Virus record (IMG/VR): IMGVR_UViG_3300027736_001324
Span: 62,001-126,000 of that record
Length of the DNA: 64,000 nucleotides
Reading direction: 5' to 3' (one strand)
Numbering within the stretch: the first letter of the stretch is position 1; every line of letters starts with the position of its first letter. Position numbers and translations under genes: made by a program. This document shows positions 15,708 through 52,000 of this stretch, in pieces. The notes below the pieces were generated by a model. The model worked only from the letters and a program-made list of their open reading frames with translations, was not told the DNA's origin and did no database searches.

Positions 15708-16039
15708 CCGAAGAAGATTATATTATTATTTGGGAAGCACCTAAATTAATACCGCCGGAGTATAGATTATATTATGATGACAAGGGTAAAGTAATTTGCT
15801 ATTCAGGAGATAAATCGGTAGAGGGCAAGTACATTGTTATTGATGCACAAACTTTTGTTGAAGCAAGACCTGATCTAGTGGTTATCGATGAAAAACTATC
15901 CCGTGCTAGACCAAACGCAATGGTAAGTAAATTGATGCCTGACGATAGTGAAGGGGTCACTTGTCATCCAGAAGATATGAGTATAATAGTTGATGATGCC
16001 AATCACATTAAATGGAAATTAAATATATATGAACTCTAA
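15704..16039 (+). CDS. Hypothetical protein
   Basis: Overlaps both neighbours, consistent with translational coupling. Confidence 0.65.
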   Translation: MTEEDYIIIWEAPKLIPPEYRLYYDDKGKVICYSGDKSVEGKYIVIDAQTFVEARPDLVVIDEKLSRARPNAMVSKLMPDDSEGVTCHPEDMSIIVDDANHIKWKLNIYEL

Positions 16040-16979
16040 TATCGTAGATGTGGCAGACTTGGATTGTATCTATCTAAGTTATGATGAGCCACAGAAAGAA
16101 GAATTCTGGCTTAAGATAAAGAACATGGTTCCCTGGGCAAAGCGTGTTGATAGTGTTAAAGGTAGTGATGCCGCACATAAAGCCGCAGCAGAAGAATCTG
16201 ATACCGAAAGATTTATTCTTATTGATGGTGATAATATGCCTAATGAGAATTTCTTTAATATACAATTAGACTTTACTGATAAAGGTTCTGAATATCAGCT
16301 AGCACAATATCGTTGGAAAGCTGTTAATAGTATTAACGGACTACGTTATGGCAATGGCGGCATGAGTAGCTGGACTAAAACTTATGTGCGTGAAATGAAA
16401 ACTCACGAAAATCAAAAAGACGGAGATGTAGCACGTATTGCTGATTTCTGTATGGATGGAAAAGATAATTTATATTGGGCAATGCATGATTGTTATTCTA
16501 CTACTTATCCTAATTATACTCCGTTTCAAGCGTGGCGTGCTGGATTCCGAGAAGGAGTAAAAATGGTTCTTGATAAAGGTGCAAGACCTGATATTGACAC
16601 TTTTAAAGAAACTGTTGCTAGTCGCAACTTAAACAATTTAACAATCTGGCATAACGTAGGTGCTGATGTTGAGAATGGCATGTGGGCTATCTATGGTGCA
16701 AGACTTGGAACATATATGACTATGTTAACTGAGTGGGATCACGCAAATGTTCAATGGTTTGATAACTATATAACACTTTGGGAAGAACAAGAATACAGAG
16801 ATCCAGAACGTGAAGCAACATTGATTGGTGAAGCATTAAATGATAAACTAGGATTGCCAATGTGTACATTGAGTAGCGAACAAAGCAAATTCTTTAAGCG
16901 ACACTATAATGCTGATAAGTACAATATCGGTCCATTGATAAGAGAGATGGATGTAATAAGAAAGATTGAGGGTTGGTAA
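16029..16979 (+). CDS. GT2-like glycosyltransferase-family protein
   Basis: 'IYLSYDEP', 'GSDAAHKAAA', 'FILIDGDN' DxD, 'AWRAGFREGVKM'. Confidence 0.6.
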   Translation: MNSNIVDVADLDCIYLSYDEPQKEEFWLKIKNMVPWAKRVDSVKGSDAAHKAAAEESDTERFILIDGDNMPNENFFNIQLDFTDKGSEYQLAQYRWKAVNSINGLRYGNGGMSSWTKTYVREMKTHENQKDGDVARIADFCMDGKDNLYWAMHDCYSTTYPNYTPFQAWRAGFREGVKMVLDKGARPDIDTFKETVASRNLNNLTIWHNVGADVENGMWAIYGARLGTYMTMLTEWDHANVQWFDNYITLWEEQEYRDPEREATLIGEALNDKLGLPMCTLSSEQSKFFKRHYNADKYNIGPLIREMDVIRKIEGW

Positions 16980-18550
16980 TGAAAAAGCTAGATGATGTAA
17001 TTTGGATAAAAAATAATTCCGGTGATATTGTTTCTAATAAAGAAAATGTAGAAACTGTAAAAAATCTATTAAATGACACTGGATGTGGATTTTGTTTAGC
17101 AAAGTTTACACAAGTCACTATGCATTTGGGTACAGGATTAGTACATTCATGTCATCATCCAAAAGCACATGTTGTGCCATTGGAAGAATTAGAAAATAAC
17201 CCGGCTGCATTGTTTAATACAAGCAAGTTAAAAAAAGCACGAAAACAAATGTTGTCCGGCGAGAAACCAAGTGAGTGTGATTATTGCTGGCGCGTAGAAG
17301 ATAGAAATAGTCCAAGTGACAGATACTTCAAGAGCCTTGAAAATTGGGCATTATCAAGTCATGATATGGTACTTGATAATGGACATGAGATTGATTACTA
17401 TCCTACTTACTTAGAGGTTGACTTTAGCAACGTATGTAATTTTAGCTGTATCTATTGCGGGCCTGAGTATAGTAGCATTTGGGTAGAAGATTTAAAAAGA
17501 AACGGTCCAGTTAAAGTATTAGATAATACAAGCAAGGTACAATGGGTACAGGGATGGCAAGACTTAGATTCTATTACATATAAGAACAGAGAACATAATC
17601 CATATGTTGAAGCATTTTGGAAATGGTTCCCCGATGCATATAAGAAACTTAAGTTTTACCGTATTACGGGTGGAGAGCCATTACTAAGCAAAGAAACATT
17701 TAGAAGTATTGATTGGCTCATTGAGAATCCAAATACTGAATTAGATTTCAGTATTAACAGTAACATGGGTGTACCAGATAAGTTATGGTATTCATTTTTA
17801 GATAAGATAAAAGTATTAGCAAATGGAAATTATGTTAAGAAATTTACCTTGTTTACAAGCGTTGATGCCTGGGGAGAGAAAGCAGAATATCTACGCCCTG
17901 GATTAGATTTTGAATTATTCAAAAAACGATATGAAGAAGTCCTACAAATTGGTGGTGTAAGATGCGTAATCATGTGTACATTTAATCTATTGAGTGTTAC
18001 TAGTATACAAAAGTTATTAGAATGGCAGTCTGAGTTACGAAGCAAATATAATGTTGACAGAGAGTTGTTACATTTAGAAACACAATTTGGTGTTAATCTA
18101 GGTGGAGAAATTTCTCATACTGAAAGAAACAAATTATCCGGTGAGCATTTTGCAATAGTTGGTATTGATATTCCGTATCTGCGTCATCCTCAATGTTTAG
18201 ATGCACATTTCTCGGATAAAAATTTGATTGAGAAATATTTAGTGCCGGCGATTAATTTCATGGCAAAAAACACAGGAAGTTCGCATTGGGGATTACATCA
18301 AGGGTATGAGTCATATGAAGTTGAAAAAATGAAAAGAAATGTATTTGATATAATTCATTTCAATTCAATACATGATGAAGAAAATCCAGTTGTAGTTGAA
18401 GGTAGGGCGAAGTTTTATGATTTTGTTAATGATATGGATAGGCGGCATGGTAAAAATTTCGTAGATGTCTTCCCAGAGTTTAAATCATTTTATGAAAAAT
18501 GTAGACAAAACAAAAACGACATATTAAAAGAGGAACATAAACTACCATGA
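16979..18550 (+). CDS. Radical SAM protein with N-terminal Cys-rich (twitch/SPASM-like) domain
   Basis: CNFSCIYC (CxxxCxxC), 'TGGEPL', N-terminal 'FCLAKF...HSCHH...ECDYCW'. Start taken at the ATG overlapping the upstream TAA. Confidence 0.85.
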   Translation: MKKLDDVIWIKNNSGDIVSNKENVETVKNLLNDTGCGFCLAKFTQVTMHLGTGLVHSCHHPKAHVVPLEELENNPAALFNTSKLKKARKQMLSGEKPSECDYCWRVEDRNSPSDRYFKSLENWALSSHDMVLDNGHEIDYYPTYLEVDFSNVCNFSCIYCGPEYSSIWVEDLKRNGPVKVLDNTSKVQWVQGWQDLDSITYKNREHNPYVEAFWKWFPDAYKKLKFYRITGGEPLLSKETFRSIDWLIENPNTELDFSINSNMGVPDKLWYSFLDKIKVLANGNYVKKFTLFTSVDAWGEKAEYLRPGLDFELFKKRYEEVLQIGGVRCVIMCTFNLLSVTSIQKLLEWQSELRSKYNVDRELLHLETQFGVNLGGEISHTERNKLSGEHFAIVGIDIPYLRHPQCLDAHFSDKNLIEKYLVPAINFMAKNTGSSHWGLHQGYESYEVEKMKRNVFDIIHFNSIHDEENPVVVEGRAKFYDFVNDMDRRHGKNFVDVFPEFKSFYEKCRQNKNDILKEEHKLP

Positions 18551-22739: not shown

Positions 22740-24041
22740 TTATTTGAACTTGACATTCATCGAACAGGCGCCTGCATTTGACCAACAACCGCCGGTGTAG
22801 GCAACAAACGCTCCAGAAGTAGTGGGTTTAATTTGTGCCGAATATGGCTTTAACGTAACGCTAGGGTTATAAAAAGTATGTATAACACTGGCAGTAACTG
22901 TATCAGTTGAGTATTTAATAATAGCCCATTCTACTCCTTCTATTGGTACTCCTGCCCACCCGTCAGTAACGTAGAAATAAAAATACCCATTATCGTATAC
23001 AACATCTAGCGCGGTGCTATATCTAGTGCCATGAGAAGTTGATAATGGCATGATAAATTTTTTAATAGTTGACCAATCAAAACCTCCTTTTTTGTCCCCC
23101 TTGACCCAAATCGTAAATGACTCTTTAGACAAAATCAAATCCAATCGACCATCAATTGGAATTACCATGAGGTTCCACATTATATTTAAATCTGGCATTG
23201 AAGAAGATTTTGGAATTATTTTGGTATCTTGTTTAAATGTACCGTCGCCATTCCCCAACAAAACTGCCACACTATCAACTCCGCTATTAGAATCGGGGAA
23301 AATAGTATTACCAAAAACATTAATAGTTACTATATCAATATTTCCGTCACCGTTTATATCGGCTGCTGCTGCTTGGTGAGCGTATATGTTAAATGGAACT
23401 TCTACTCGTTTGTACGTATTGTCTTTTTGGCTTAAAAAAATAATTTGATTACTACTCTTATAATTTATTAATTCGGACATAGAAAATCCAAAATTATAGA
23501 AATCATTGTCAACCCCACTACATGAAATATAAACATCAGGTTTACCGTCATTGTTGAAATCCGCGGTCATAGAATAACTTGCTGATATACAAGTTGCCCT
23601 ATCTGAGTTCGTCTTTAATAATTCGTTTGTTCTATCTCGCCACTTTCCATTAATATCCTGACTAAGAAAATAAGCCACCCCTGGCGCATCAGGTAAATTT
23701 TCAATACCGTACTTATTGGTAGCCCGCATAGATGAAACGAAAGCTGAATATTTCCCTTCTTGAAAAAAATCCCCAAATGTAACAGACCTTTCATTTGAAT
23801 CTAATTCGTCGGAATATACTTTTGGTATTCCTAAATTACGTACTCCGGGCATTTGAGTTTGATCAAAATTAATTGAGTTTTTATTTTCGTAAGAAGTACC
23901 AAATACAGCAAACGGTACTATTTTGGCAGGTATATTAGCTGGCGCAGTAGTATTACTAATAGAACCGCCCCCGCCCCCACCCCCACACGCAACTAATGCA
24001 AAAATGGAATATGCTATTGCTGTATACTTGATATAGTTCAT
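22740..24041 (-). CDS. Lipoprotein with FG-GAP/VCBS-like Ca-binding repeats
   Basis: Lipobox 'LVA-C' followed by poly-Gly; 'ADFNNDGKPD', 'ADINGDGNID', 'GNGDGTF'. Confidence 0.8.
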   Translation of the reverse strand: MNYIKYTAIAYSIFALVACGGGGGGGSISNTTAPANIPAKIVPFAVFGTSYENKNSINFDQTQMPGVRNLGIPKVYSDELDSNERSVTFGDFFQEGKYSAFVSSMRATNKYGIENLPDAPGVAYFLSQDINGKWRDRTNELLKTNSDRATCISASYSMTADFNNDGKPDVYISCSGVDNDFYNFGFSMSELINYKSSNQIIFLSQKDNTYKRVEVPFNIYAHQAAAADINGDGNIDIVTINVFGNTIFPDSNSGVDSVAVLLGNGDGTFKQDTKIIPKSSSMPDLNIMWNLMVIPIDGRLDLILSKESFTIWVKGDKKGGFDWSTIKKFIMPLSTSHGTRYSTALDVVYDNGYFYFYVTDGWAGVPIEGVEWAIIKYSTDTVTASVIHTFYNPSVTLKPYSAQIKPTTSGAFVAYTGGCWSNAGACSMNVKFK

Positions 24042-30996: not shown

Positions 30997-31108
30997 AAAA
31001 ATTAAATACTTCATTGTAGAACGATTGTTTGGTAAAATTACCAGAGAATTGCGCTATAGAAAAAGATTAAAAGAATTACGCAAACGAGACCCGTTTATTT
31101 ACAAATGA
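30983..31108 (+). CDS. Small basic 41-aa protein ending RKRDPFIYK, not in the ORF track
   Basis: AAGGA RBS; ATGA-coupled to the carbamoyltransferase gene. Confidence 0.65.
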   Translation: MSILKKIKYFIVERLFGKITRELRYRKRLKELRKRDPFIYK

Positions 31109-32586
31109 ACTATATAGGTATAAGTGCCGGTTTTCATGACGCTGCAATCAGCGTAGTTGATGACCATGGCAACATCTTGTTTGCTGGACATAGTGAACGC
31201 TATAGTAAGAATAAGCATGACAAAGATGTATGTGAAGAATTATTAACGGATGCATTAAAGCACACTAATTCATCATACTTAGAGTATCATTACTATGAAC
31301 GCCCGTGGTTAAAGTCATTACGTCAATTACGCACTGGTGAAGGCTTTACTTGGCCGTCATGGGAAAAGATATTAGGTAGTACATATCATCAGATGGGTAC
31401 ACCTAAAATACATACACATAGTCATCATCTATGTCATGCGGCTGCAGGATTTCAAACAAGTCCATTTGAAGATGCCACTGTTGTTGTGATTGATGCTATA
31501 GGAGAATTTGATACTATCACTATCTGGGATGCTTGGTACGATTTCTCAACGGGCAAAGCACAATACAAAAAACTATGGAGTCTTAAATATCCAGATAGCA
31601 TTGGATTATTCTATTCAGCAATGACTGAACGAGTTGGACTACGCCCATTAGATGAAGAATACATTCTAATGGGTATGGCTGCGTACGGAGAACCTAATCA
31701 TGTTGCTGATATGATTAATGAGTTAGTAGATAAAAAAGATATATTAACCTTCAAGCAAAATCTACACACTGGGGTTAGTAAAGATTTCTTAAAAGATGCT
31801 GATCCATTGGACATTGCTAGCAGTAGTCAACACTTAGTTGAGTACATGATTACTAGAGTAATGAGTAAAGCTAGAACATTGGGTCGTAGTAGAAATCTAG
31901 TATACGGCGGCGGGGTAGCATTGAATTGTTTAGCGAACAGACTATTAGGGAACTTCTATGAAAATATTTGGATTATGCCTAACCCTGGCGATGCGGGTAA
32001 TAGTCTCGGTGCAGCATGTCTTGGGCACAGTCGTAAAACTAATTGGACTGATGCTTTTCTTGGTCATAACATTCCTGGTAAGTATCCTGTTAACGGTTTA
32101 CTTGATGTGTTACTTACTGATAGGATTGTTGGTGTCGCTTCAGGACGAGCAGAGTTCGGCCCGAGAGCATTGGGAAATAGAAGTCTACTCGCAGACCCAA
32201 GAGGCGATGAAATTAAAGATAAAGTAAATGAGATTAAACGTAGACAAAAGTTTAGACCATTTGCTCCTGTCATATTAGAAGAATATGCTCATCAGTATTT
32301 TGAAATGCCTAAGCACTGGCATGATAGTAGATATATGCAGGTTATTAGTAAATGTAAATATCCTGAGAAATTCCCTGCTATTGCACATCACGATTGGACT
32401 AGTAGAGTACAAACTGTACCAAAAGATGGGTCTGGCATCAGAGAGTTATTAGAAAAATGGTATGTAATGACCGAATGCCCAATGTTATTGAACACAAGTT
32501 TAAACATACGTGGCGAGCCAATGGTCAACGACCATAGTGATGCTGATAGGTTTGAAAAACTATATGGAGTTAAGGTTTTGTCATAA
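31105..32586 (+). CDS. O-carbamoyltransferase (NodU/CmcH family)
   Basis: 'HDAA', 'ER...KH', 'HHLCHAA', 'GGVALNC', 'EFGPRALGNRS', 'RPFAP', 'LNTSLN.RGEP'. Confidence 0.92.
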   Translation: MNYIGISAGFHDAAISVVDDHGNILFAGHSERYSKNKHDKDVCEELLTDALKHTNSSYLEYHYYERPWLKSLRQLRTGEGFTWPSWEKILGSTYHQMGTPKIHTHSHHLCHAAAGFQTSPFEDATVVVIDAIGEFDTITIWDAWYDFSTGKAQYKKLWSLKYPDSIGLFYSAMTERVGLRPLDEEYILMGMAAYGEPNHVADMINELVDKKDILTFKQNLHTGVSKDFLKDADPLDIASSSQHLVEYMITRVMSKARTLGRSRNLVYGGGVALNCLANRLLGNFYENIWIMPNPGDAGNSLGAACLGHSRKTNWTDAFLGHNIPGKYPVNGLLDVLLTDRIVGVASGRAEFGPRALGNRSLLADPRGDEIKDKVNEIKRRQKFRPFAPVILEEYAHQYFEMPKHWHDSRYMQVISKCKYPEKFPAIAHHDWTSRVQTVPKDGSGIRELLEKWYVMTECPMLLNTSLNIRGEPMVNDHSDADRFEKLYGVKVLS

Positions 32587-32594
32587 GTAATTAA

Positions 32595-35500
32595 ATGCTA
32601 AGAGATGTATTTTATTACGGCGCCAAACCCAACGTTCACCCAAGAGAAAAATTTGCAACTTCACTAGAAGATGCTAGACAACAATCTACCACAGAACATT
32701 TTTGGATAATAAACGAATATTGTGATTATCGTAATTTTGATTGGGACTTTGATTTTGAATTTCTACCCGACGAAGATGTATGGGCAGAAGAACATAACAA
32801 CGTATGGCCTAGTATACATCAAAAAGATAGCGGCACATGGCTATGCACATCAAACCCAACCGAGATAATTATATATCGGGCTGACGTTGAACCAGTAAAA
32901 CGTAAAAACGAAACACACAAAAATTGGGTACTACTAGATTTAGTAGATGAAACTAAATTTGATTTTAGTTGGCATCCAGACCCAACTGACCCTCCCTATA
33001 TCTATACATGGGGATGTAAATATTTCCCAGTAGAATTGCAAGCCTGCTTAGAATATCATGTTCCGGGTGCAACAACCGTGAAGTACATGGATAGTATTGT
33101 AGAGTTGTTGCCACATACAGATCGATGGGTTGAAGTACAGAATATTGACAAATCATTATTTGATATGTCATGGAGACCTAGTCCATTGGATCCTCCTATG
33201 AATTATGTTTGGGGTAACAAACACATTGATGGCAAATTGAAATCTACACTAGAGTATCATATGCCCGGTGCGACTGATACAAAGTATATGTCTTATCCTT
33301 TGCCAGTATTACCTGAGTGGGATAGATGGCAAATCCATGACGAGATAGATAAAACTAGTTTTGATTTTAGTTGGAGACCAGATCCAAGAGAGCCGGCTTA
33401 TATATACCAATGGGGTAATAAACATTATAGTAGTGAATTATCTCCTACTATTTCCTATACTGCCCCGGGAGCAACTGAAGTTAAACATATGTCACAAGAT
33501 GTTAATCTAGCAGTAAGTAAAAATTGGGTTTTCTATCACGCAGTAAATAAAACTAAATTTGATTTGACATGGAGACCTGATCCAACTAGCCCACCTTATA
33601 TCTATGCATGGGGAAATAAATATGATCCAGCAGAAGTTAAACCTACGCTAGAATATATTGTACCCGGGGCAACCGAATACAAGTATATGGACGTTGTTGA
33701 TTTAGAGCCAGAATGGGATAGATGGAAAGAACATATTTTTGTTGATCATTCTAAATTTGATTTTAGTTGGAGACCAGATCCTAATCTACATGAGCCACCT
33801 TATATCTATGTGTGGGGCAACAAGTATGATCCGGCAGAAGTTAAGCCTACGCTAGAATATCATGTGCCCGGAGCAACTGAATATAAGTATATGAACATTG
33901 TTGATTTAGAGCCAGAATGGGATAGATGGCAAGAAATTCAACCAGTAGATAAAAGTAAGTTTGATTTTAGTTGGAGACCTGATCCTAACTTACACGAACC
34001 ACCTTATATCTATGTGTGGGGTAATAAACATATATCAGCAGAACTTAAATCAACAATAGAATATCATGTGCCGGGCGCTACAGAACGCAAGTACATGAGT
34101 CAGTTAGTAGAAGTGTTGCCTGAATTCAATCGGTGGAAAGAAATACAATCTATTGATAGAAACAAGTTTGATTTAACATGGAGACCAGATCCAAGAGAAC
34201 CAGCATATATTTATGTATGGGGAAATAAACATATACCGGGTGAACTGAAATCAACAATAGAATATCAATGTGACGGGGCTACTGAATATAAGTATATGGA
34301 TGAACTTGTTGAAGTATTACCTGAACAAGAACACTGGAAAGTTACGCAAGAAGTAAAAAACTTTGACTTTACCTGGAGACCTGATCCACGTGAACCTGCA
34401 TACATTTACACTTGGGGTAATAAACATATAGCAGCAGAACTTAAACCCACAATAGAGTATTATTGTGAGGGTGCAACAGAACACAAGTATATGGGTGAAG
34501 TTGATGTTGTTCCTGAAATGGATCGTTGGAATATTGTACAAGAAATTTCTAACACATTTGATTTGTCATGGAGACCTGACCCACGTGAACCTGCATATAT
34601 CTATACATGGGGTAACAAATATATACCCGGAGATATAAAACCTACACTTGAATATCATTGTGAGGGTGCTACCGAACGAAAGTATATGGGTGATGTTGAT
34701 GTATTGCCTGAGTTAGACAAGTGGAAAGAAATTCAATCAATAGATAAAACTAAGTTTGATATGTCGTGGAGACCAGACCCGCGTGAACCGGCATACATTT
34801 ACGTGTGGGGTAATAAACACGTTGAAGCTGAATTAAAGTCAACTATTGAATATCATTGTCCTGATGCAACCGAACGCAAGTACATGGGTGATGTTGAAGT
34901 ATTACCTGAATTAGATAAATGGAATATTGTACAACAAGTAGAAAACTTTGATTTTACATGGAGACCAGATCCAAGAGAACCTGCATATATCTACACATGG
35001 GGTAACAAGCATGTTAGTGCTGAATTGAAACCGACACTTGAATATCATTGTCCTGATGCAACTGAACGAAAATACATGGGTGATGTTGAAGTGTTACCGG
35101 AGTTTGACAAATGGAAAGAAATACAGCCAATAGATAACACTAAGTTTGATATGTCGTGGAGACCTGATCCACGTGAACCTGCATATATTTACACATGGGG
35201 TAATAAACATGTTAGTGCTGAGTTTAAGCCAACACTTGAATATTATTGTGAAGGTGCAACAGAGCGCAAGTACATGGGTGATGTTGAAGTTTTACCTGAG
35301 TTTGACAAATGGAATATTGTACAACAAGTAGAAAACTTTGATTTTACATGGAGACCAGATCCAAGAGAACCTGCATATATTTATGTATGGGGTAACAAAT
35401 GGATACAAGGAGATTTAAAATCTACACTTGAGTATCACTGTGAAGGGGCAACTGAATTCAAGTATATGAAAGAATTATTAGATGTTGCACCAATACACGA

Positions 35501-38500
35501 CCACTGGAACATTATACAAAAAGTAGAAAACTTTGATTTTAGTTGGAGACCTGATCCACGTGAACCTGCATATATTTATATATGGGGTAATAAACATATA
35601 GCAGGTGAATTAAAACCAACACTTGAATTTCATTGCCAAGGTGCTATTGAACGTAAATTTATGGGTACTGCTGAAGTAGCACCAGAATGGGATAGATATC
35701 AAATATTAATACCAGTAGATAAAACTAGCTTTGACTTCACGTGGAGACCAGATCCCAGAGAACCTGAATTTATATATGTATGGGGTAATCAATCTAACAT
35801 TGCAGAAAAAGAACCTACTATTGAATATCATTGTCCTGGCGCTACTGAACGAAAATACATGAATGACAATGTGGCTAAGACATTACCTGTAGTTGAAAAT
35901 TGGAAGATATTAATTTCAGTAGAAAACTTTGATTTTAGTTGGAGACCTGATCCTAATAGCCCTCCCTACATCTATATATTTGGTAATCAATGGCATGATG
36001 CTATGACAGAGCCTACATTAGAATATCATGTAGAGGGCGCTGCCGAAAAGAAATATGTCACAGAGATTGTTCCTACTGCAACAAAGACTCAGGAGTATTG
36101 GAAAACTCTTATTCCAATCGAATCATTTGATTATAGCTGGAGACCCAATCCACATTCAACCCCTTACATATATGTATTTGGTAATCAATGGCATGATAGC
36201 ATAACTGAACCCACAATAGAATATCATTGTCCTGGCGCAACGGATAAGAAATACATTACTGATGTAATTGCATTAGCCAAATCAACAGCAACAGACAATC
36301 ATTGGAAACGATTAATACCGATTGAATCATTTGATTATAGCTGGAGACCTGATCCTAATAGTCCTCCTTATATCTATGTGTTTGGTAATAAATGGAACGA
36401 TGCTGCAACTGAACCATCGGTTGAATATTATGTTGACGGCGCAACTGAACACAAATATGTATCTGACCCTGTTGCTATTCCTAAAGCAGAGATACAATAC
36501 TGGGCTATCAATAATAATGATGACTTAGAAACATTTGATTTTACATGGAGACCCAATCCACATAGTCCATCACAAATATATCAATGGCAAGATAATGGAC
36601 CAAGGTATACGGTTCCTGGCGCAACAGATGTGGTGTTAATGGAACACACTGGAAAGACAAAGAAAGTAATCGTTAATCGTTACAAGATTAAAACAACATT
36701 GGAAGATTTAATTAACGAACATCCGGAAGAAGTATTCTGGGCTATCAACCCTGATTTGAATTATGATAAGTTTGACTTTAGTTGGCGACCCAACGAAGAA
36801 AACTTTAGACATATAAATGTATTTGGCAATGAGTATAGCAAAAATACACAAACGTATTATATTAATAGTCCAATGTATATGCTTGGAAACAAAGAATATA
36901 ATTATGTAGAGGATCAATCAGTGCAGGTTGATAGTAATCTAAGTATGTTCTTTATTGATAAAAGTAATAAGGAAAGTACAAGTAGATTTAATGAATTAAA
37001 ATTACGCTATCCACAATTACAAAAGACAAGATATCTTAATAGTTGGGTAGATACAATCAATCGTTGTATTACTAAATCAGAAACTAAATTGTTCTGGGTA
37101 CTGAATAGTGAATTAGATTATAGTGAGTTTGATTTTGACTTCTATCCTAGCCCATGGCAAATGAATATGATACATGTGTTTGGAACACAATGGAGTCATT
37201 GGGGTAACACCTACATGGTTAATAAAGAAACCTTTGCAGAAGATACAAAGTATGTAAAGATTATTGAACATCTATCTAACTTGAATTTTGTAAAACAAAG
37301 AAAAGCAAAAGCAACAAATGTATTGTATGACATTGTTTATATTGACCATGGTAATAAAGATTTGTCTGATATTAATAACTTAATCATCAAGTATGAAAAG
37401 AGTTATTTGACTACTTTTAGAAACATGTTAGATAAACTTTCAGTAAAGAAAGAACATTATGTTTGGGTAGCTAGTACTATATGTGATTACACAAACTTTG
37501 ACTTTACCTATATATGTGATCCGTTTGCCAAAGAGCAATTACATGTATTTCCAAGTGATAAGCAGAAGTTTGGTGATACGTTTTTAATTGATGTGAATAG
37601 ATTACGTGAATTAGTAGATGATATGACTACATTGGAAGACTACAATAAGATTAACTTTAATCAAAGTCAAAGAGTAAAAAGATTAGAAGCACCTGTGATT
37701 ATTACTGAGGAAGATACTCATGTATCTAGTATTAACACGGAGTTTGATTTTCCGTATGCTGTATTCACCACAGTTGATAATAAAGACATTAAAGTATTGG
37801 ATAATGAACCAATGAACATATGGAGTTATGAGACTAAAAATATCATAATAACCAGTGAAGGTGGAACAAGAATTATTGTTCCCAAAGAAGCAAGAAAATA
37901 TATTAAAAACGAATTATATGATTATCCATATATAATGCCCAATGACAAATTAGCAAAGTCTAATCCGTTGGACATTGTTTTCTTTAGTAACGGTGAAGCC
38001 TGTGCTGAGGCAAATTATAAACATTTGCTTAAACTAACTGAAAAGCTACCCAACAATGTATTAAGAATTGACGGTATAAATGGTCGTGTAAAAAGCCAAC
38101 ATGCTGCTGCTGAAAGTAGTGCTACCCCATGGTACTTCTTAGTCAATGCTAAACTGAAAGTAGATTCAAAGTTTAATTTTAATTGGCAACCGGACAGATT
38201 GCAGATACCTAAGCATTATATTTTCCATGCCACCAACCCTGTAAACGGATTAGTATATGGTCACCAAGCTATCGTTGCTAACAACAAGAAACTTACCTTA
38301 GCAAACTTTGGAACTGGATTAGACTTTACTATGGACAGTGAGCATGAAGTTGTTGCTATTAATAGCGGCATTGGTATGTATAATAGTAGTGAGTGGGATA
38401 CATGGCGTACTGCATTCCGCGAATGTATTAAACTTAAATTATCCAAAACTATGGAAAATAAAGAACGTCTAGATGTATGGTTAAACGTTGGCCTTGGTGA

Positions 38501-38639
38501 GTTTGCCCAATATAGTATACAAGGTGCCAAAGATGCAGTAGAATACTATTATGAAGTTGAAAGTGACTTTAAAAAATTGCGTTTAAGTTATGATTGGGAT
38601 TGGTTAAGAACATTCTATGAGACTAAATACAAACTATGA
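32595..38639 (+). CDS. 2014-aa protein with ~19 tandem ~65-aa W-R-P-D-P repeats and terminal GT-like domains
   Basis: Repeat unit FD(F/L/M)(S/T)WRPDPREPAYIY.WGNK....KPT(L/I)EYH..GATE.KYM; the C-terminal domain resembles ORF 16029-16979. Confidence 0.8.
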   Translation: MLRDVFYYGAKPNVHPREKFATSLEDARQQSTTEHFWIINEYCDYRNFDWDFDFEFLPDEDVWAEEHNNVWPSIHQKDSGTWLCTSNPTEIIIYRADVEPVKRKNETHKNWVLLDLVDETKFDFSWHPDPTDPPYIYTWGCKYFPVELQACLEYHVPGATTVKYMDSIVELLPHTDRWVEVQNIDKSLFDMSWRPSPLDPPMNYVWGNKHIDGKLKSTLEYHMPGATDTKYMSYPLPVLPEWDRWQIHDEIDKTSFDFSWRPDPREPAYIYQWGNKHYSSELSPTISYTAPGATEVKHMSQDVNLAVSKNWVFYHAVNKTKFDLTWRPDPTSPPYIYAWGNKYDPAEVKPTLEYIVPGATEYKYMDVVDLEPEWDRWKEHIFVDHSKFDFSWRPDPNLHEPPYIYVWGNKYDPAEVKPTLEYHVPGATEYKYMNIVDLEPEWDRWQEIQPVDKSKFDFSWRPDPNLHEPPYIYVWGNKHISAELKSTIEYHVPGATERKYMSQLVEVLPEFNRWKEIQSIDRNKFDLTWRPDPREPAYIYVWGNKHIPGELKSTIEYQCDGATEYKYMDELVEVLPEQEHWKVTQEVKNFDFTWRPDPREPAYIYTWGNKHIAAELKPTIEYYCEGATEHKYMGEVDVVPEMDRWNIVQEISNTFDLSWRPDPREPAYIYTWGNKYIPGDIKPTLEYHCEGATERKYMGDVDVLPELDKWKEIQSIDKTKFDMSWRPDPREPAYIYVWGNKHVEAELKSTIEYHCPDATERKYMGDVEVLPELDKWNIVQQVENFDFTWRPDPREPAYIYTWGNKHVSAELKPTLEYHCPDATERKYMGDVEVLPEFDKWKEIQPIDNTKFDMSWRPDPREPAYIYTWGNKHVSAEFKPTLEYYCEGATERKYMGDVEVLPEFDKWNIVQQVENFDFTWRPDPREPAYIYVWGNKWIQGDLKSTLEYHCEGATEFKYMKELLDVAPIHDHWNIIQKVENFDFSWRPDPREPAYIYIWGNKHIAGELKPTLEFHCQGAIERKFMGTAEVAPEWDRYQILIPVDKTSFDFTWRPDPREPEFIYVWGNQSNIAEKEPTIEYHCPGATERKYMNDNVAKTLPVVENWKILISVENFDFSWRPDPNSPPYIYIFGNQWHDAMTEPTLEYHVEGAAEKKYVTEIVPTATKTQEYWKTLIPIESFDYSWRPNPHSTPYIYVFGNQWHDSITEPTIEYHCPGATDKKYITDVIALAKSTATDNHWKRLIPIESFDYSWRPDPNSPPYIYVFGNKWNDAATEPSVEYYVDGATEHKYVSDPVAIPKAEIQYWAINNNDDLETFDFTWRPNPHSPSQIYQWQDNGPRYTVPGATDVVLMEHTGKTKKVIVNRYKIKTTLEDLINEHPEEVFWAINPDLNYDKFDFSWRPNEENFRHINVFGNEYSKNTQTYYINSPMYMLGNKEYNYVEDQSVQVDSNLSMFFIDKSNKESTSRFNELKLRYPQLQKTRYLNSWVDTINRCITKSETKLFWVLNSELDYSEFDFDFYPSPWQMNMIHVFGTQWSHWGNTYMVNKETFAEDTKYVKIIEHLSNLNFVKQRKAKATNVLYDIVYIDHGNKDLSDINNLIIKYEKSYLTTFRNMLDKLSVKKEHYVWVASTICDYTNFDFTYICDPFAKEQLHVFPSDKQKFGDTFLIDVNRLRELVDDMTTLEDYNKINFNQSQRVKRLEAPVIITEEDTHVSSINTEFDFPYAVFTTVDNKDIKVLDNEPMNIWSYETKNIIITSEGGTRIIVPKEARKYIKNELYDYPYIMPNDKLAKSNPLDIVFFSNGEACAEANYKHLLKLTEKLPNNVLRIDGINGRVKSQHAAAESSATPWYFLVNAKLKVDSKFNFNWQPDRLQIPKHYIFHATNPVNGLVYGHQAIVANNKKLTLANFGTGLDFTMDSEHEVVAINSGIGMYNSSEWDTWRTAFRECIKLKLSKTMENKERLDVWLNVGLGEFAQYSIQGAKDAVEYYYEVESDFKKLRLSYDWDWLRTFYETKYKL
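32960..36620 (+). repeat. Intragenic tandem repeat array, period ~190-205 bp
   Basis: 'tggagacc' anchors recur about every 195 bp; 34917-34990 and 35307-35380 are identical over 74 bp. Confidence 0.9.
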
Positions 38640-40650: not shown

Positions 40651-41535
40651 ATGAAGAAAATCGCACTTGCGACAATTTTAGCCGCTGCATCTCTTGCAGC
40701 ATCAGCACAAGTAGCCGTTTACGGTAAAATGCGTGTGTATGAAGAATCAGTAACAGTTGGATCTGCGGCAGCAGTAACAGCACTAACCAACGATACAAGT
40801 CGTTTAGGTTTTAAAGGTACTGAAGCATTAGGTGGCGGACTATCTGCTAACTTCACAATTGAAACTGGTATCGGTGCAGATGCTCCAGCAGCATCAACAT
40901 TGGGCGACAGAACTATGATTGTAGGTTTGTCAAACAGTTTAGGTTCAGTTAATGTTGGTCGTGACAAGCACACAATCGCACGTACACTTGATAACTATGA
41001 CGCAATGGGTAATGTATACGGTTCTAGTACCGCAGTCATTCACGCTGCTCAAGGTTCACGTTTCAGTAATGCGTTGTTTGTTTCAGCTACTCCAATGGCT
41101 GGTTTAACTGTTAACTACATCAATAGCAATAGCGAAGTAGCAGGCGTTAATAACCCACAAGCTGCTAGTATTGAATTTACTCGTGGTCCAATCAGTGCTA
41201 CTGTAGCAAATTTTGATAACGGTACAACAAGTACTTCAACAATCTATGGTGCAAAAGTTAAAGTTGAAAAGACTGGTACTACAGTTTTCGCTACATACTC
41301 TGATGACAAAGTTTCAGGTGTAACTACAAGTGGTAAAAGTATTGGTGTTAATCACCCAGTTACTGGTTCATTGATGGCACTTGCTAGCTATGGTGAGAAC
41401 AATACTACTAAAGCATTAGACTTAGGCGCAAGCTATAGTTTAAGCAAGCGTACAACAGTTCACGCTCGTTACATCAAAGAAGATGCAGCAGCAACAACTA
41501 CTAAGTACGCATTGGGTATGGAACACAATTTCTAA
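40651..41535 (+). CDS. Outer-membrane porin (betaproteobacterial general porin type)
   Basis: Signal peptide; 'SRLGFKGTEALGGGLSA.F.IE'; 'YSLSKRT'; C-terminal 'GMEHNF'. Confidence 0.9.
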   Translation: MKKIALATILAAASLAASAQVAVYGKMRVYEESVTVGSAAAVTALTNDTSRLGFKGTEALGGGLSANFTIETGIGADAPAASTLGDRTMIVGLSNSLGSVNVGRDKHTIARTLDNYDAMGNVYGSSTAVIHAAQGSRFSNALFVSATPMAGLTVNYINSNSEVAGVNNPQAASIEFTRGPISATVANFDNGTTSTSTIYGAKVKVEKTGTTVFATYSDDKVSGVTTSGKSIGVNHPVTGSLMALASYGENNTTKALDLGASYSLSKRTTVHARYIKEDAAATTTKYALGMEHNF

Positions 41536-41557
41536 TCCAATCTAATCACATTGATTA

Positions 41558-41578
41558 TAAAGGGGCTTTGCCCCTTTA
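41558..41578 (+). terminator. Hairpin after the porin gene
   Basis: taaaggggc-ttt-gccccttta. Confidence 0.6.
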
Positions 41579-41583
41579 GCCAT

Positions 41584-41601
41584 ATGTAACATTACTGTCA
41601 C
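41584..41601 (+). promoter_or_regulatory. Pho box (PhoB-binding site) upstream of pstS
   Basis: ATGTAAC-ATTA-CTGTCAC: two half-sites 11 bp apart, matching the CTGTCAT-N4-CTGT(C/A)A(C/T) consensus, 39 nt before the pstS ATG. Confidence 0.75.
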
Positions 41602-41640
41602 AATTCAATAACTAAATATTTGTGTAACAAAGGAGATTAC

Positions 41641-42636
41641 ATGAAAAAACTATTTGCTATTCTATTAGCGGCTGTAACATTTGCAGCATCAGCACAAGAC
41701 ATTACAGGAGCCGGGGCAACATTCCCGGCTCCGTTGTATTCAAAGTGGGCAAGTGAATATAACAAAGCAACTGGCACTAAAATCAACTATCAATCAGTTG
41801 GTTCAGGAGCTGGCATTAAACAAATTGAAGCAAAGACAGTTACATTCGGTGCAAGTGATATGCCACTTACAGATGACAAACTAGCAGCGTCAGGGTTGTT
41901 TCAGTTTCCGACAGCAATCGGCGGAGTTGTCCCAGTTATCAATGTCAATAACATTGCTCCAGGACAATTGAAATTAACAGGCACAGTTATCGCTGATGTC
42001 TTTTTAGGTAAGATCACTAAATGGGATGACAATGCTATTAAGGCATTGAACCCAACATTAGTTTTGCCTAATCAAGATATTACTGTAGTTCGTAGAGCAG
42101 ATGGTAGTGGTACTACATTTATTTGGACAAACTATCTAAGCAAAGTAAGCAAAGAGTTTAAAGAAGTTATCGGTGAAGGTACTGCTGTAAATTGGAAAGT
42201 TGGAGCAGGCGGTAAGGGCAATGAAGGCGTAGCACAAATGGTTCGTCAACTACCGGGCTCATTGGGATATGTAGAGTTTGCTTATGTTAAACAAACTAAA
42301 ATGAATTGGGTTAACGTACAAAATAGTGCTGGAACTTGGGTGGCCCCAACAGAAGATGCTTTTAAAGCAGCGGCTGCTAATGCTGATTGGAACAAAAGTT
42401 ACTATCAGATACTAACTAATCAAGCAGGCAAAGAAGCATGGCCTATCAGTGGTGCTACATTTATTCTTGTTTACATCAAACCAGAAGATGTTGCTAAGTC
42501 TAAAGCAGCAATGACATTCTTTGATTGGGCATTCAGTAACGGAGATAAAGCAGCAGATGATTTAGATTATGTTGCACTACCAACATCAGTTAAGAACAAG
42601 ATTCGTGCTGATTGGAAACATTTAGGATTATTTTAA
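41641..42636 (+). CDS. pstS: Phosphate ABC transporter substrate-binding protein PstS
   Basis: 'ITGAGATFP', 'GSGAG', 'FGASD', 'RRADGSGTT', 'GKGNEG', 'WPI'. AAGGAG RBS precedes the ATG at 41641. Confidence 0.96.
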   Translation: MKKLFAILLAAVTFAASAQDITGAGATFPAPLYSKWASEYNKATGTKINYQSVGSGAGIKQIEAKTVTFGASDMPLTDDKLAASGLFQFPTAIGGVVPVINVNNIAPGQLKLTGTVIADVFLGKITKWDDNAIKALNPTLVLPNQDITVVRRADGSGTTFIWTNYLSKVSKEFKEVIGEGTAVNWKVGAGGKGNEGVAQMVRQLPGSLGYVEFAYVKQTKMNWVNVQNSAGTWVAPTEDAFKAAAANADWNKSYYQILTNQAGKEAWPISGATFILVYIKPEDVAKSKAAMTFFDWAFSNGDKAADDLDYVALPTSVKNKIRADWKHLGLF

Positions 42637-48454: not shown

Positions 48455-48460
48455 TTTTAT

Positions 48461-48494
48461 GGGTGAGAATGGTGTGAACATTCTCACTCTTTTT
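48461..48494 (+). terminator. Hairpin/terminator after the AAA gene
   Basis: gtgagaatg...cattctcac followed by a T-run. Confidence 0.6.
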
Positions 48495-48496
48495 AC

Positions 48497-48525
48497 TTGC
48501 GTTTAAATAGATGTTGTGCTATAAT
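48497..48525 (+). promoter_or_regulatory. sigma70-type promoter
   Basis: TTGCGT-17-TATAAT with TG upstream of the -10. Confidence 0.65.
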
Positions 48526-48553
48526 ATAGCATATTTTAGATAAAGGATTGTAT

Positions 48554-51704: not shown

Positions 51705-52000
51705 TGAGCCCAGACTTCATCGAAAAGTGGGAACATATCCTTGAAGATGTTGAGAAAAATAAAATACCCGTAGAGTTTATTAAGAAATTAGTAGTCAAAC
51801 TACAGGGTAAAAAACAACATACTATAAACATTGAAAAGTTTTTAACTCAAGGATTAGACCCAGATCAGATAGAGGATATTGTCAGTAGAAAATTGCAAGA
51901 ATTAGATGAATCAGTGGTTGGTGTTGAATTTATTCTTAACGTCCAAAGCATTGCTGATACTGTACAGCCTGAAACAGATAAACTATTGAATAGACTATGA
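51704..52000 (+). CDS. Hypothetical protein
   Basis: Coupled to neighbours at both ends. Confidence 0.65.
   Translation: MSPDFIEKWEHILEDVEKNKIPVEFIKKLVVKLQGKKQHTINIEKFLTQGLDPDQIEDIVSRKLQELDESVVGVEFILNVQSIADTVQPETDKLLNRL

What the first reader, a model, noticed from the sequence alone, without database searches (positions are those of the whole stretch)
32595..38639. 2014-aa protein built from ~19 tandem ~65-aa 'WRPDP' repeats that look derived from a GT-like domain
Seen: the repeat core (FDFSWRPDP..P.YIY.WGN...PT.EY..PGA...KY) also appears in degenerate form inside the terminal domains (FDFEFLPD, FDFDFYPS, FNFNWQPD). The last domain aligns by eye with ORF 16029 (LDIVFFSNGE/LDCIYLSYDE; QHAAA/AHKAAA; WRTAFRECIKL/WRAGFREGVKM), but its DxD position reads 'VNAK', suggesting it is catalytically dead. 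A 390-bp two-unit duplication (74 identical bp) indicates recent expansion. Inference: an aromatic-rich glycan-binding scaffold or molecular ruler for the upstream glycosylation enzymes.
Basis: partly seen in the sequence, partly recalled or inferred. Interest (0 to 1): 0.65.

Follow-up and report, generated by a model that had tools for sequence, protein, structure and literature searches.

The report
Stalked glycosyltransferase-derived giant phage protein
A 2014-residue protein of a freshwater jumbo phage joins a rigid rod of 19 copies of a small beta module, itself a duplicated fragment of a glycosyltransferase fold, to four degenerate glycosyltransferase-like domains; the family is very common in metagenomes, unnamed and of untested function.

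Summary
ORF 32595-38639 encodes 2014 aa with 19 tandem 64-69-aa 'FDFSWRPDP' repeats (aa 122-1370), and the 74-nt exact repeat at 390-bp spacing is there.

AlphaFold2 and fold searches show three GT-A (GT2-like) domains in the C-terminal 570 aa. Two truncated copies form the N-terminal domain and the domain just after the repeats. The repeat is homologous to the segment after the DxD strand of these domains. Six repeats model as a confident all-beta rod (pLDDT 94) with no solved structural relative.

The last domain is homologous to ORF 16029 (HMM E 3e-18). It carries V-N-A-K where ORF 16029 and the stand-alone relatives in Ralstonia phage RsoM2USA carry D-G-D. The Lys and the other shared polar residues are invariant, so 'dead' is not shown.

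Relatives number in the thousands, all from metagenomes. They carry 1-38 repeats and always sit in a sugar-nucleotide, carbamoyltransferase and radical-SAM island. All parts are under purifying selection (dN/dS about 0.1).

The most likely role is a stalked, non-canonical glycan-handling head serving that island. A virion fibre with lectin-like heads is the main rival. Function is untested.

The parts
32595..38639 (+). Whole gene, 2014 aa (P0001); acidic (pI 5.1, net charge -99), 15% aromatic residues. No hydrophobic N-terminus by eye and GRAVY -0.72; no signal-peptide or TM predictor was run.
32595..32957 (+). N-terminal domain, aa 1-121: a truncated GT-A-like unit (beta-alpha-beta 'FWIINEY', then a degenerate FDF module 'FDFEFLPD...NVWPS.HQKDSGTW')
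   Evidence: AF2 model of the 1-repeat orthologue P0145; the N profile hits domains A, B and C at 1e-6 to 1e-9; the start and length are conserved in about 250 relatives
32958..36704 (+). Array of 19 tandem 64-69-aa repeats, aa 122-1370. Consensus: FD.sWRPDP.eP.YIY.wGNk....e.kpT.EYh..GATe.KYm. The model has four beta strands per unit.
   Evidence: AF2 of six units gives pLDDT 94 and pTM 0.73; dN/dS 0.11 against L028
34557..35336 (+). Repeats R9-R12: the youngest part, a two-unit (390-bp) duplication. R9 and R11 are 81% and R10 and R12 85% identical at the DNA level. The 74-nt exact repeat lies at 34917 and 35307.
36705..36935 (+). Domain A, aa 1371-1447: a truncated GT-A-like unit ('FWAINPD..YDKFDFSWRPNE'), the closest relative of the repeat
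   Evidence: hhalign repeat versus A: 97% probability, E 2e-11
36936..37325 (+). Domain B, aa 1448-1577: GT-A / nucleotide-diphospho-sugar-transferase fold; the DxD position reads 'LNSE'
   Evidence: VIA Z 10.1-10.4 to MobA and Aq1419 over 126-130 residues; B and C match at 1e-14 to 1e-19
37326..37799 (+). Domain C, aa 1578-1735: GT-A-like; the DxD position reads 'ASTI'; conserved 'LHVFPSD.QKFGDTF'
   Evidence: (CHSY3-CHPF and R699 alignments span it)
37800..38636 (+). Domain D, aa 1736-2014: GT2-like GT-A domain plus a helical C-terminal bundle; paralogue of ORF 16029
   Evidence: VIA Z 11.8 to B4GALNT1 and Z 10-11 to GT2 enzymes
38142..38153 (+). 'VNAK' (aa 1850-1853) at the position of the DxD motif. 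The Lys is invariant in all 18 aligned orthologues and present in 131 of the 150 best representatives of the wider family.
16029..16979 (+). ORF 16029 (316 aa): stand-alone, DxD-bearing ('LIDGDN') paralogue of domain D; highly conserved (82-93% identity in the 120 best of at least 8000 cluster representatives)
16973..18550 (+). Radical SAM gene overlapping the end of ORF 16029. In one relative (P0512) a D-type (xxK, 'FAVFAKIE') domain of this superfamily is fused to a radical SAM domain.
31105..32586 (+). Carbamoyltransferase (NodU/TobZ type) ending 8 nt before the gene. It is directly upstream in the L029 and L030 relatives and within 2.6-4 kb in relatives of 36-38% identity.

Best explanation
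**Proposal.** The protein is a stalked, GT2-derived glycan-handling protein that belongs to the phage's conserved sugar island.

**Anatomy (shown by sequence comparison and modelling).** A 121-aa N-terminal domain is followed by a rigid all-beta rod of 19 modules, and then by a head of one truncated and three full GT-A-fold domains (A to D). All of these parts descend from one GT-A-like ancestor by internal duplication at three grain sizes: whole domain, half domain and a 65-aa module. The rod module is the segment that follows the DxD strand.

**Mechanism (inferred).**
- The head no longer uses the canonical metal-dependent DxD chemistry, because every domain lacks DxD. It still binds a nucleotide-sugar or the growing glycan through the residues it shares with its DxD-bearing paralogue ORF 16029.
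- It therefore acts as a non-catalytic, or metal-independent, partner for the neighbouring sugar-nucleotide pathway. That pathway comprises a kinase-nucleotidyltransferase, an aldolase, a HAD phosphatase, a sugar C-methyltransferase, radical SAM enzymes and a carbamoyltransferase.
- The N-terminal domain anchors the protein. The rod, whose length changes quickly between relatives (1-38 units), sets the distance between the anchor and the head.
- The target of the glycan is most likely a virion surface protein, but it is not known.
For: - **Fold of the head:** the AF2 model of the 1-repeat orthologue has pLDDT 84.8. Foldseek matches tandem-GT-A proteins: LH3, K4CP, Mimivirus R699, LARGE1, SunS and WrtF (E 5e-5 to 1e-2). 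VIA gives Z 11.8 for domain D and Z 10.4 for domain B. The best BFVD matches outside the family are multi-GT-domain proteins of giant viruses.
- **Internal homology:** N, A, B and C match one another at 1e-6 to 1e-19, and A matches the repeat.
- **Link to GT2:** D is homologous to ORF 16029. One wider relative reaches the Pfam GT2 cut-off (P0437, 29.8 bits against 23.3).
- **Loss of DxD goes with repeats:** it is specific to the D type of domain and universal in repeat-bearing proteins (43 of 43), with an invariant Lys in its place.
- **Rod:** pLDDT 94 and pTM 0.73.
- **Selection:** dN/dS is about 0.1 on every part.
- **Architecture:** an N-terminal domain of about 121 aa and a head of 570-710 aa are constant among the long relatives, while the repeat number varies from 1 to 38.
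- **Context:** the sugar island is conserved down to 36-38% identity. In those distant loci no canonical Pfam glycosyltransferase lies within 10 kb.
- **No export signal seen by eye:** the N-terminus is not hydrophobic, the protein is hydrophilic (GRAVY -0.72) and the rod is strongly acidic; no signal-peptide or TM predictor was run.
Against: - No experiment, virion proteome or annotated relative exists. The only isolate with any relative (Ralstonia phage RsoM2USA) has just the stand-alone DxD-bearing domains, annotated as hypothetical.
- Binding of domain D to ORF 16029 was not supported by the complex prediction, which is not evidence either way.
- Invariant polar residues, including a candidate catalytic Asp in 'LDFT', would also fit a fully active enzyme.
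- A conserved N-terminus, a length-variable rod and a somewhat more divergent C-terminal head (53-63% against 69-72% identity in three orthologues) is also the classic layout of a phage fibre.
- The model coordinates could not be inspected, so the surface or core position of the conserved aromatic residues and the rise per repeat are unknown.
Confidence: 0.4

Rival explanations
1. Virion fibre or capsid-decoration adhesin. The N-terminal domain docks on the particle, the beta rod projects outward, and the degenerate GT-A domains have been exapted as lectin-like receptor-binding heads that recognise host surface polysaccharide. Repeat-number change would then tune reach.
For: - The layout is a conserved N-terminus, a variable-length rigid rod and a slightly more divergent C-terminal domain.
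- Repeat number changes rapidly among close relatives: 15-26 units at 77-85% identity.
- Loss of DxD with retention of the binding residues fits a lectin-like role.
- A 3523-aa ORF and a Peptidase_G2 / intramolecular-chaperone protein, typical of fibres and spikes, lie 19-32 kb upstream on the same strand.
Against: - The gene always sits inside the enzyme island, not among recognisable structural genes.
- The rod is modelled confidently as a monomer, whereas most phage fibres are trimers. Oligomerisation was not tested.
- No match to any fibre, Ig-like or beta-helix fold.
- No virion proteome is available.
Confidence: 0.25
2. Active, metal-independent glycosyl- or sugar-phosphate transferase or polymerase. 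The invariant Lys at the DxD position neutralises the leaving (di)phosphate in place of Mn2+. From my own knowledge, basic residues do this in metal-independent GT-A enzymes such as GT14 C2GnT. The tandem GT-A domains would build the glycan and the rod would hold the acceptor.
For: - The Lys is invariant, as are E, Q-P-D, N, Y-G, D-F and W-R..F-R-E..K, all shared with the DxD-bearing paralogue.
- The xxK type is the majority of the superfamily, 131 of the 150 best representatives.
- Distant loci have a complete sugar-nucleotide pathway but no canonical GT within 10 kb.
- The fold matches include bifunctional polymerases: K4CP, CHSY3-CHPF, LARGE1 and hyaluronan synthase.
Against: - Every domain lacks DxD, while close stand-alone relatives keep it strictly.
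- ORF 16029 and other unassigned ORFs could be the real transferases.
- No Pfam GT model matches the protein at E below 1.
Confidence: 0.2
3. Molecular ruler, or the acceptor itself. Either the rod measures the chain length of a polymer made between the two ends, as the WbdD coiled coil does for the E. coli O9a antigen (my own knowledge), or the repeats (conserved S/T in FDF[ST]W, P-T and G-A-T) are the glycosylated substrate, giving a giant glycoprotein.
For: - A rigid rod with two conserved ends, and repeat numbers of 1-38.
- Conserved Ser/Thr positions in each unit.
- A glycan island next door.
Against: - No polymerase activity or polymer is known.
- The conserved residues of the repeat may all be structural.
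- Orthologues with a single repeat exist. That fits a spacer of arbitrary length, but it makes a ruler or a multi-site substrate non-essential to the family's basic function.
Confidence: 0.1
4. Part of a DNA hypermodification pathway. The adjacent carbamoyltransferase and the thymidylate-synthase-like gene 13 kb downstream would make 5-carbamoyloxymethyl-cytosine or a glycosylated base, and the giant protein would be a DNA glycosyltransferase.
For: - Phage carbamoyltransferases next to ThyA-like genes make 5cmdC (PMC8670742).
- GT-A-fold DNA glycosyltransferases, and kinase plus nucleotidyltransferase sugar-activation genes, occur in phage DNA-glycosylation clusters (bioRxiv 10.1101/2023.12.21.572611).
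- ThyA lies at 51997-52908 here, and ThyX lies near the distant relatives.
Against: - The protein is strongly acidic (net -99; rod -73), which is unfavourable for DNA binding.
- The GT-A DNA glycosyltransferases aligned in that preprint share conserved R...DDD...EDY/F active-site motifs, and nothing of this size or repeat architecture turned up in the passages I read there.
- In the MetaGPA study, carbamoyltransferases flanked by glycosyltransferases were on unmodified contigs.
- The island contains a sugar C-methyltransferase, an aldolase and epimerases, typical of complex glycans.
Confidence: 0.05

Closest known systems
Tandem GT-A proteins with a non-catalytic GT-A-like accessory domain: human LH3/PLOD3 and Mimivirus R699 collagen glucosyltransferase
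   Same: They are the best Foldseek matches (E 5e-5 to 3e-4). Both have several consecutive GT-A-fold domains in one chain, of which only some are catalytic. R699 is viral and modifies a structural (collagen-like) protein (PMC9546862, PMC12279948).
   Different: Sequence identity is 8-10% and alignment rmsd is high (16-27 A over the multi-domain span). Those proteins keep a DxD in the catalytic domain, whereas every domain here lacks it. They have no repeat rod, and this protein has no lysyl-hydroxylase domain.
Bifunctional GT-A polymerases (E. coli K4 chondroitin polymerase K4CP, CHSY3-CHPF, LARGE1) and multi-GT-domain proteins of giant viruses (BFVD hits from Megavirus, Moumouvirus, CeV-01B)
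   Same: Tandem arrangement of GT-A domains. In CHSY3-CHPF one partner is a weakly active or inactive paralogue (my own knowledge), which is the kind of enzyme plus pseudo-enzyme pairing proposed here for ORF 16029 and domain D.
   Different: The polymerases have two DxD-bearing active sites. There is no Pfam family match here. No known member carries a rod built from a GT-A fragment.
Pfam PF00535 Glycos_transf_2 (GT2, inverting GT-A enzymes such as SpsA)
   Same: Domain D and ORF 16029 have the GT2-like order of elements: beta1 'FFSNGE / LSYDE', beta2 'RVDG', the helix 'HAAAE', the DxD strand, and later D-F and W-R motifs. SpsA, WrtF, SunS and a Leptospira GT2 align at Z 10-11.3. One superfamily member passes the PF00535 cut-off.
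   Different: Neither P0001 nor ORF 16029 matches PF00535 in the scans run (P0001: nothing at E below 1; ORF 16029: nothing at E below 0.01). The DxD is replaced by N-A-K in domain D.
Ralstonia phage RsoM2USA gp348 and gp350 (hypothetical proteins)
   Same: They are the only relatives found in a cultured phage. They are stand-alone homologues of domain D (32% identity, tblastn E 1e-18) and of ORF 16029, and lie 1.4 kb apart.
   Different: Both keep DGD. The isolate has no N-terminal domain, no repeats and no B or C domains. Their function is unknown.
Length-variable rods of tandem small domains in phage proteins (for example T4 Hoc Ig-like arrays) and the WbdD coiled-coil ruler
   Same: Only the principle is shared: a rigid spacer whose unit number varies between relatives and that separates two functional ends.
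   Different: The fold is unrelated. The repeat model has no significant match in the PDB (best Foldseek E 0.35; best VIA Z 2.7) or among non-family ESM Atlas clusters.

Membership tests
GT-A fold glycosyltransferases (GT2-like) | Single Rossmann-like alpha/beta/alpha nucleotide-diphospho-sugar-binding fold | tested here: met
   Tested on the AF2 model of an orthologue. Domain D: Z 11.8 (B4GALNT1; 142 aligned, rmsd 2.8) and Z 10-11 to many GT2 enzymes. Domain B: Z 10.4. Domain C is covered by two-domain alignments. This is a prediction, not an experimental structure.
GT-A fold glycosyltransferases (GT2-like) | DxD (or a variant) metal- and diphosphate-binding motif at the end of the fourth beta strand | tested here: not met
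   The positions read INEY (N), INPD (A), LNSE (B), ASTI (C) and VNAK (D). ORF 16029 and RsoM2USA gp348 and gp350 have DGD at the aligned position.
GT-A fold glycosyltransferases (GT2-like) | Significant match to a curated family model (Pfam PF00535 or related) | tested here: not met
   No Pfam family at E below 1 apart from a chance SNAP hit. PHROGs gives only two weak matches (E 1e-4) over 12-36 residues of the repeats to families of unknown function and nothing for the separate domains; the PDB sequence profile finds nothing. A distant superfamily member (P0437) does pass PF00535.
GT-A fold glycosyltransferases (GT2-like) | Glycosyl-transfer activity | not testable with these tools
   Needs a biochemical assay.
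Paralogue family of ORF 16029 / RsoM2USA gp348 and gp350 (unnamed phage GT2-like family) | Shared motif set: E (S-x-x-E), G, H/K-AAA, Q-x-D, N..NGL.YG, D-F, W-R..F-R-E..K | tested here: met
   23 columns are invariant across 9 D domains and 7 ORF 16029-type proteins. HMM E 3.4e-18. 1483 representatives at E up to 1e-3 in the 50% library.
Known protein repeat families (Pfam repeats; Ig-like, beta-helix, cell-wall- or choline-binding, PASTA) | Sequence or fold match of the repeat unit or array | tested here: not met
   - Pfam: none.
- Foldseek against the PDB: best E 0.35.
- VIA against 48,161 chains: best Z 2.7. Seven of the nine weak hits are GT-A enzymes or related transferases (FKRP, CesA, a glucan synthase) aligned to one unit.
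- ESM Atlas: only clusters of the same viral family (TM 0.55); the PASTA and InlB-B rows have TM 0.18-0.26.
Phage tail fibre, receptor-binding or decoration proteins | Presence in the virion; trimeric fibre or Ig-like decoration fold | not testable with these tools
   No cultured phage carries the full protein. No fold match to fibres. Oligomeric state was not tested.

The most novel reading that the evidence does not exclude
The 65-aa module is a new, autonomous beta-rod fold that arose by repeated duplication of an internal fragment of an enzyme domain (the post-DxD segment of GT-A). The whole protein would then be a new type of stalked pseudo-glycosyltransferase whose rapidly changing rod length (1-38 units) sets the geometry of glycan deposition, or of glycan recognition, on jumbo-phage particles. 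That would make it a protein-encoded length determinant for viral surface glycans, widespread in freshwater phages.
Probability: 0.2. Interest if true: 0.8.

Novelty: new variant of a known kind. Interest (0 to 1): 0.6.

Why it matters
- **Size of the family.** It is among the larger uncharacterised protein families of aquatic jumbo phages: about 3300 90%-identity cluster representatives in two length-limited searches, and 1483 representatives at 50% identity for the head domain. It has no Pfam model, only marginal sub-domain PHROG matches, no name and no solved structure.
- **Evolutionary mechanism.** It shows an unusual route to a new structure. A fragment of an enzyme fold was amplified into a confidently modelled rigid rod, and relatives show the same amplification at the half-domain and whole-domain scales.
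- **Possible biology.** If the head handles the product of the adjacent, equally conserved sugar island, these phages would make and place a complex carbamoylated and methylated glycan with their own machinery, as chloroviruses and mimiviruses do. The rod would then be a simple, evolvable length parameter.
- **If it is a fibre instead.** It would be the first receptor-binding protein built from glycosyltransferase domains.
- **Practical value.** Either way, a Pfam-style model of the repeat and of the D/ORF 16029 domain would annotate thousands of 'hypothetical' proteins.

Tried and rejected
- **Family scans of the protein and its separate domains.** Pfam: no family. PHROGs: only two weak matches (E 1e-4) over 12-36 residues of the repeats to families of unknown function, and nothing for the separate domains. 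PDB sequence profile: 0 hits at E up to 1.
- **Cultured phages.** megablast against the phage collection found nothing. tblastn found only the stand-alone domain in RsoM2USA.
- **Complex prediction.** Domain D with ORF 16029 scored 0.06 against a mark of 0.32, which is no verdict and is not used as evidence either way.
- **Promoter and terminator scan.** No more sites than in shuffled sequence; nothing was learned about the operon structure beyond the 8-nt gap to the carbamoyltransferase.
- **Literature.** Five full-text searches found no description of the repeat or the family. The 'moraphage' lineage paper (PMC12619734) and the huge-phage envelope preprint (10.64898/2026.10.24.761521) do not mention it in the passages found. 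The published Cell Reports version of Pyle et al. was not held, so the preprint was read instead.
- **Repeat number against genome size.** No relation was apparent from contig lengths: 11-26 units on contigs of 340-370 kb, 7-19 units on contigs of 211-303 kb. Many contigs may be incomplete.
- **Direct link from the repeat to ORF 16029.** hhalign finds none (probability 0.4%). The link is only transitive, through domains A, B and D.
- **Alignment A2.** MAFFT slid several rows by whole repeats (973 columns). It was still used as an alignment of homologous positions, but inter-repeat covariation from it is not independent evidence.

Full report
**Observation**

The ORF at 32595-38639 (+) is open and encodes 2014 aa. 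A motif scan and a MAFFT alignment give 19 in-register repeats of 64-69 aa between aa 122 and 1370. The consensus is FD.sWRPDP.eP.YIY.wGNk....e.kpT.EYh..GATe.KYm.

An HMM of the repeats scores 59-120 bits on each copy. It finds a twentieth, degenerate copy at aa 1393 and matches no other ORF of the 263,709-bp genome that holds the window. Tandem Repeats Finder reports periods of 195, 204 and 390 nt.

At the DNA level R10/R12 are 85%, R9/R11 81% and R4/R5 80% identical, but most pairs are 50-75%. The array is therefore mostly old, with one recent two-unit duplication.

Contigs from three independent freshwater runs cover the stretch without a mismatch. Identical 2014-aa products occur on other contigs. 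The array is not an assembly artefact.

**Family and architecture**

Word-index searches found 785 relatives of 1108-3524 aa and 2513 relatives of 462-1470 aa (cluster representatives). Every relative that carries a source name is called 'hypothetical protein', and all listed sources are metagenome or assembly collections. They sit on contigs of up to 370 kb.

In about 250 fetched sequences and 27 IMG/VR loci the architecture is constant: an N-terminal domain of about 121 aa, then n repeats, then a C-terminal region of 570-710 aa. The number n ranges from 1 (P0145, 841 aa) to 38 (P0038, 3330 aa). It differs among close relatives, for example 15-26 units at 77-85% identity.

Against the orthologue in L028 (dS about 1), dN/dS is 0.22 for the N domain, 0.11 for the repeats, 0.10 for A-C and 0.12 for D. 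Every part is under purifying selection.

**Structure**

An AlphaFold2 model of the one-repeat orthologue P0145 (38-row alignment) has mean pLDDT 84.8. Foldseek against the PDB returns proteins with tandem GT-A domains: LH3, K4CP, Mimivirus R699 and LARGE1. It also returns single GT-A enzymes: SunS, WrtF, PcManGT and PBCV-1 A64R.

VIA-align places the matches as follows:
- Domain D (model 613-758): Z 11.8 to B4GALNT1 and Z 10-11.3 to GT2 enzymes.
- Domain B (model 270-401): Z 10.1-10.4 to MobA-type proteins.
- Domain C: covered by two-domain alignments such as CHSY3-CHPF over 402-755.

BFVD returns two members of the same family from uncultured freshwater phages, then multi-GT-domain proteins of giant viruses.

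A model of six repeats (P0001 aa 590-979) has pLDDT 94 and pTM 0.73 and is all-beta, with four strands per unit. It has no significant relative:
- Foldseek against the PDB: best E 0.35.
- VIA against 48,161 chains: best Z 2.7.
- ESM Atlas: only clusters of the same viral family.

Seven of the nine weak VIA rows are GT-A enzymes or related transferases (FKRP, CesA, a glucan synthase), each aligned to a single repeat. That fits the sequence evidence below but is not significant by itself.

**Internal homology**

Profiles cut from the orthologue alignment show that N, A, B and C are mutually homologous (1e-6 to 1e-19). The A profile matches almost every repeat, mostly at 1e-3 to 4e-6. hhalign gives these probabilities for the repeat:
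- versus A: 97% (E 2e-11)
- versus B: 84%
- versus C: 72%
- versus N: 61% over the whole 67-column module
- versus D: 49% over 'FNFNWQPDRLQIPKHYIF'
- versus ORF 16029: none

B versus D is 81% over 83 columns. The repeat is therefore the segment that follows the DxD strand of a GT-A-like unit, and its link to a bona fide GT is transitive.

Relatives show the same process at other grain sizes: 65-aa units with the older-looking motif 'FIHQFGTQWQRTGGP' (P0498), roughly 118-aa half-domain units (P0448) and 138-aa whole-domain units (P0485).

**The last domain and ORF 16029**

BLASTP gives E 9e-10 and the D profile gives E 3.4e-18 against ORF 16029. Across 9 D domains and 7 ORF 16029-type proteins, 23 columns are invariant: E of SNGE/SYDE, Q-x-D, N, Y-G, D-F and W-R..F-R-E..K.

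At the DxD position ORF 16029 reads IDGD. The two stand-alone relatives in Ralstonia phage RsoM2USA read VDGD. Domain D reads V-[NFP]-[AG]-K, with the Lys invariant.

A profile search of 1.84 billion representatives found 1483 relatives. Among the best 150, 131 are of the Lys type and 15 of the DxD type. All 43 that carry WRPDP-type repeats are of the Lys type.

One relative passes the Pfam GT2 cut-off. Another is a fusion of a Lys-type (D-like) domain of this superfamily with a radical SAM domain, which recalls the overlapping gene pair at 16029-18550.

Loss of the DxD is thus real and lineage-wide. But the invariant Lys and the retained polar constellation argue that the site is still used. 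'Catalytically dead' is possible, not shown.

**Context**

The TerL is of the T4 type and closest (48-50% identity) to Sinorhizobium phage Phosso and Pseudomonas phage PA5oct. The runs that hold the sequence are freshwater metagenomes.

Upstream genes include:
- ORF 16029 and a radical SAM gene
- three phrog_13607 paralogues and two DUF6071 genes
- a sugar-type C-methyltransferase
- an NTP-transferase fused to an APH-like kinase
- a shikimate-DH-like reductase and a HAD phosphatase
- a GatZ/KbaZ-like aldolase
- a carbamoyltransferase that ends 8 nt before the gene

Downstream lie a 2OG-Fe oxygenase, a porin, PstS, a metallophosphatase, a GT2 and a DUF5672 gene.

The association with carbamoyltransferase, radical SAM/SPASM and sugar-nucleotide enzymes (epimerases, DegT, GFO/MocA, PMM) holds in relatives of only 36-38% identity. 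In those loci no canonical Pfam GT lies within 10 kb.

**Interpretation**

Shown:
- a multi-domain GT-A-derived protein with a confidently modelled rod
- all parts under constraint
- hypervariable unit number
- fixed residence in a sugar island

Inferred: the head binds a nucleotide-sugar or glycan and works with the island's enzymes, and the rod is a spacer between an N-terminal anchor and the head. I put this at about 0.4.

Rivals:
- a virion fibre with lectin-like heads (0.25)
- an active metal-independent transferase (0.2)
- a ruler or a self-acceptor (0.1)
- a DNA-modification enzyme (0.05). This is prompted by the 5hmC carbamoyltransferase of PMC8670742 and the DNA glycosylation clusters of bioRxiv 10.1101/2023.12.21.572611, and disfavoured by the net charge of -99.

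A complex prediction of domain D with ORF 16029 gave no verdict.

**Novelty**

No paper, Pfam family, named PHROG (only two marginal sub-domain hits to unknown-function PHROGs) or solved structure describes the repeat or the D/ORF 16029 family. The GT-A part is a divergent branch of a known fold. The rod built from an enzyme fragment, and the stalked, DxD-less architecture, are new variants.

Noticed in passing
window 229-10800 (+): A 3523-aa ORF with no Pfam match. It is followed by a 416-aa protein with a Peptidase_G2 / intramolecular-chaperone autoproteolytic domain (11620-12870), so this is probably a giant fibre or spike module.
   Followed up: partly
window 16029-18550 (+): ORF 16029 (a DxD-bearing GT2-like protein, 82-93% identical in the 120 best of at least 8000 metagenomic cluster representatives) overlaps by 7 nt a 525-aa radical SAM gene. 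One relative (P0512, 625 aa) fuses a Lys-type (D-like, 'FAVFAKIE') domain of the same superfamily to a radical SAM domain. This suggests that GT-like domains of this superfamily and radical SAM enzymes work together.
   Followed up: partly
window 31105-32586 and 51997-52908 (+): A NodU/TobZ-type carbamoyltransferase and a thymidylate-synthase-family gene lie in one genome. This pairing makes 5-carbamoyloxymethylcytosine DNA in other phages (PMC8670742). Here they are 19 kb apart and the carbamoyltransferase sits in a sugar island, so sugar carbamoylation seems more likely.
   Followed up: partly
window 40651-42636 (+): A Gram-negative porin (Porin_4) and a PstS-type phosphate-binding protein are encoded side by side. 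The same pair lies downstream of the orthologue in a Lake Mendota contig (L029). These are auxiliary genes for phosphate uptake through the host envelope.
   Followed up: no
window 18547-21036 (+): Three consecutive paralogues (258, 250 and 324 aa) all match phrog_13607 (unknown function). Two consecutive DUF6071 genes follow at 21053-22724. This is local gene amplification inside the sugar island.
   Followed up: no
window 22740-24041 (-): A 433-aa FG-GAP-repeat protein is the only sizeable minus-strand gene in the island. FG-GAP proteins also flank the distant relatives (L033, L034).
   Followed up: no
window 47348-49825 (+): A MoxR-type AAA ATPase is followed by a DUF2201_N metallopeptidase-like / VWA protein. 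The DUF2201 gene is also near the distant relative in L031.
   Followed up: no
window 33693-33898: One 1551-nt contig of freshwater run X3 skips exactly 204 bp (one repeat unit). The joint lies in a 32-nt exact repeat. It could be a real one-unit-shorter allele or a de Bruijn graph shortcut.
   Followed up: partly
L001 (Ralstonia phage RsoM2USA, MG752970.1 216629-219688): This isolate carries two stand-alone DxD-bearing members of the D/ORF 16029 family (gp348 of 233 aa and gp350 of 317 aa), 1.4 kb apart and annotated as hypothetical. It is a cultured system in which the family could be tested.
   Followed up: partly
P0448, P0485, P0498 (representatives): Relatives amplify different pieces of the same ancestral unit: 21 x 65-aa modules, 9 x about 118-aa half domains, and 3 x 138-aa near-identical whole GT-like domains.
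   Followed up: partly
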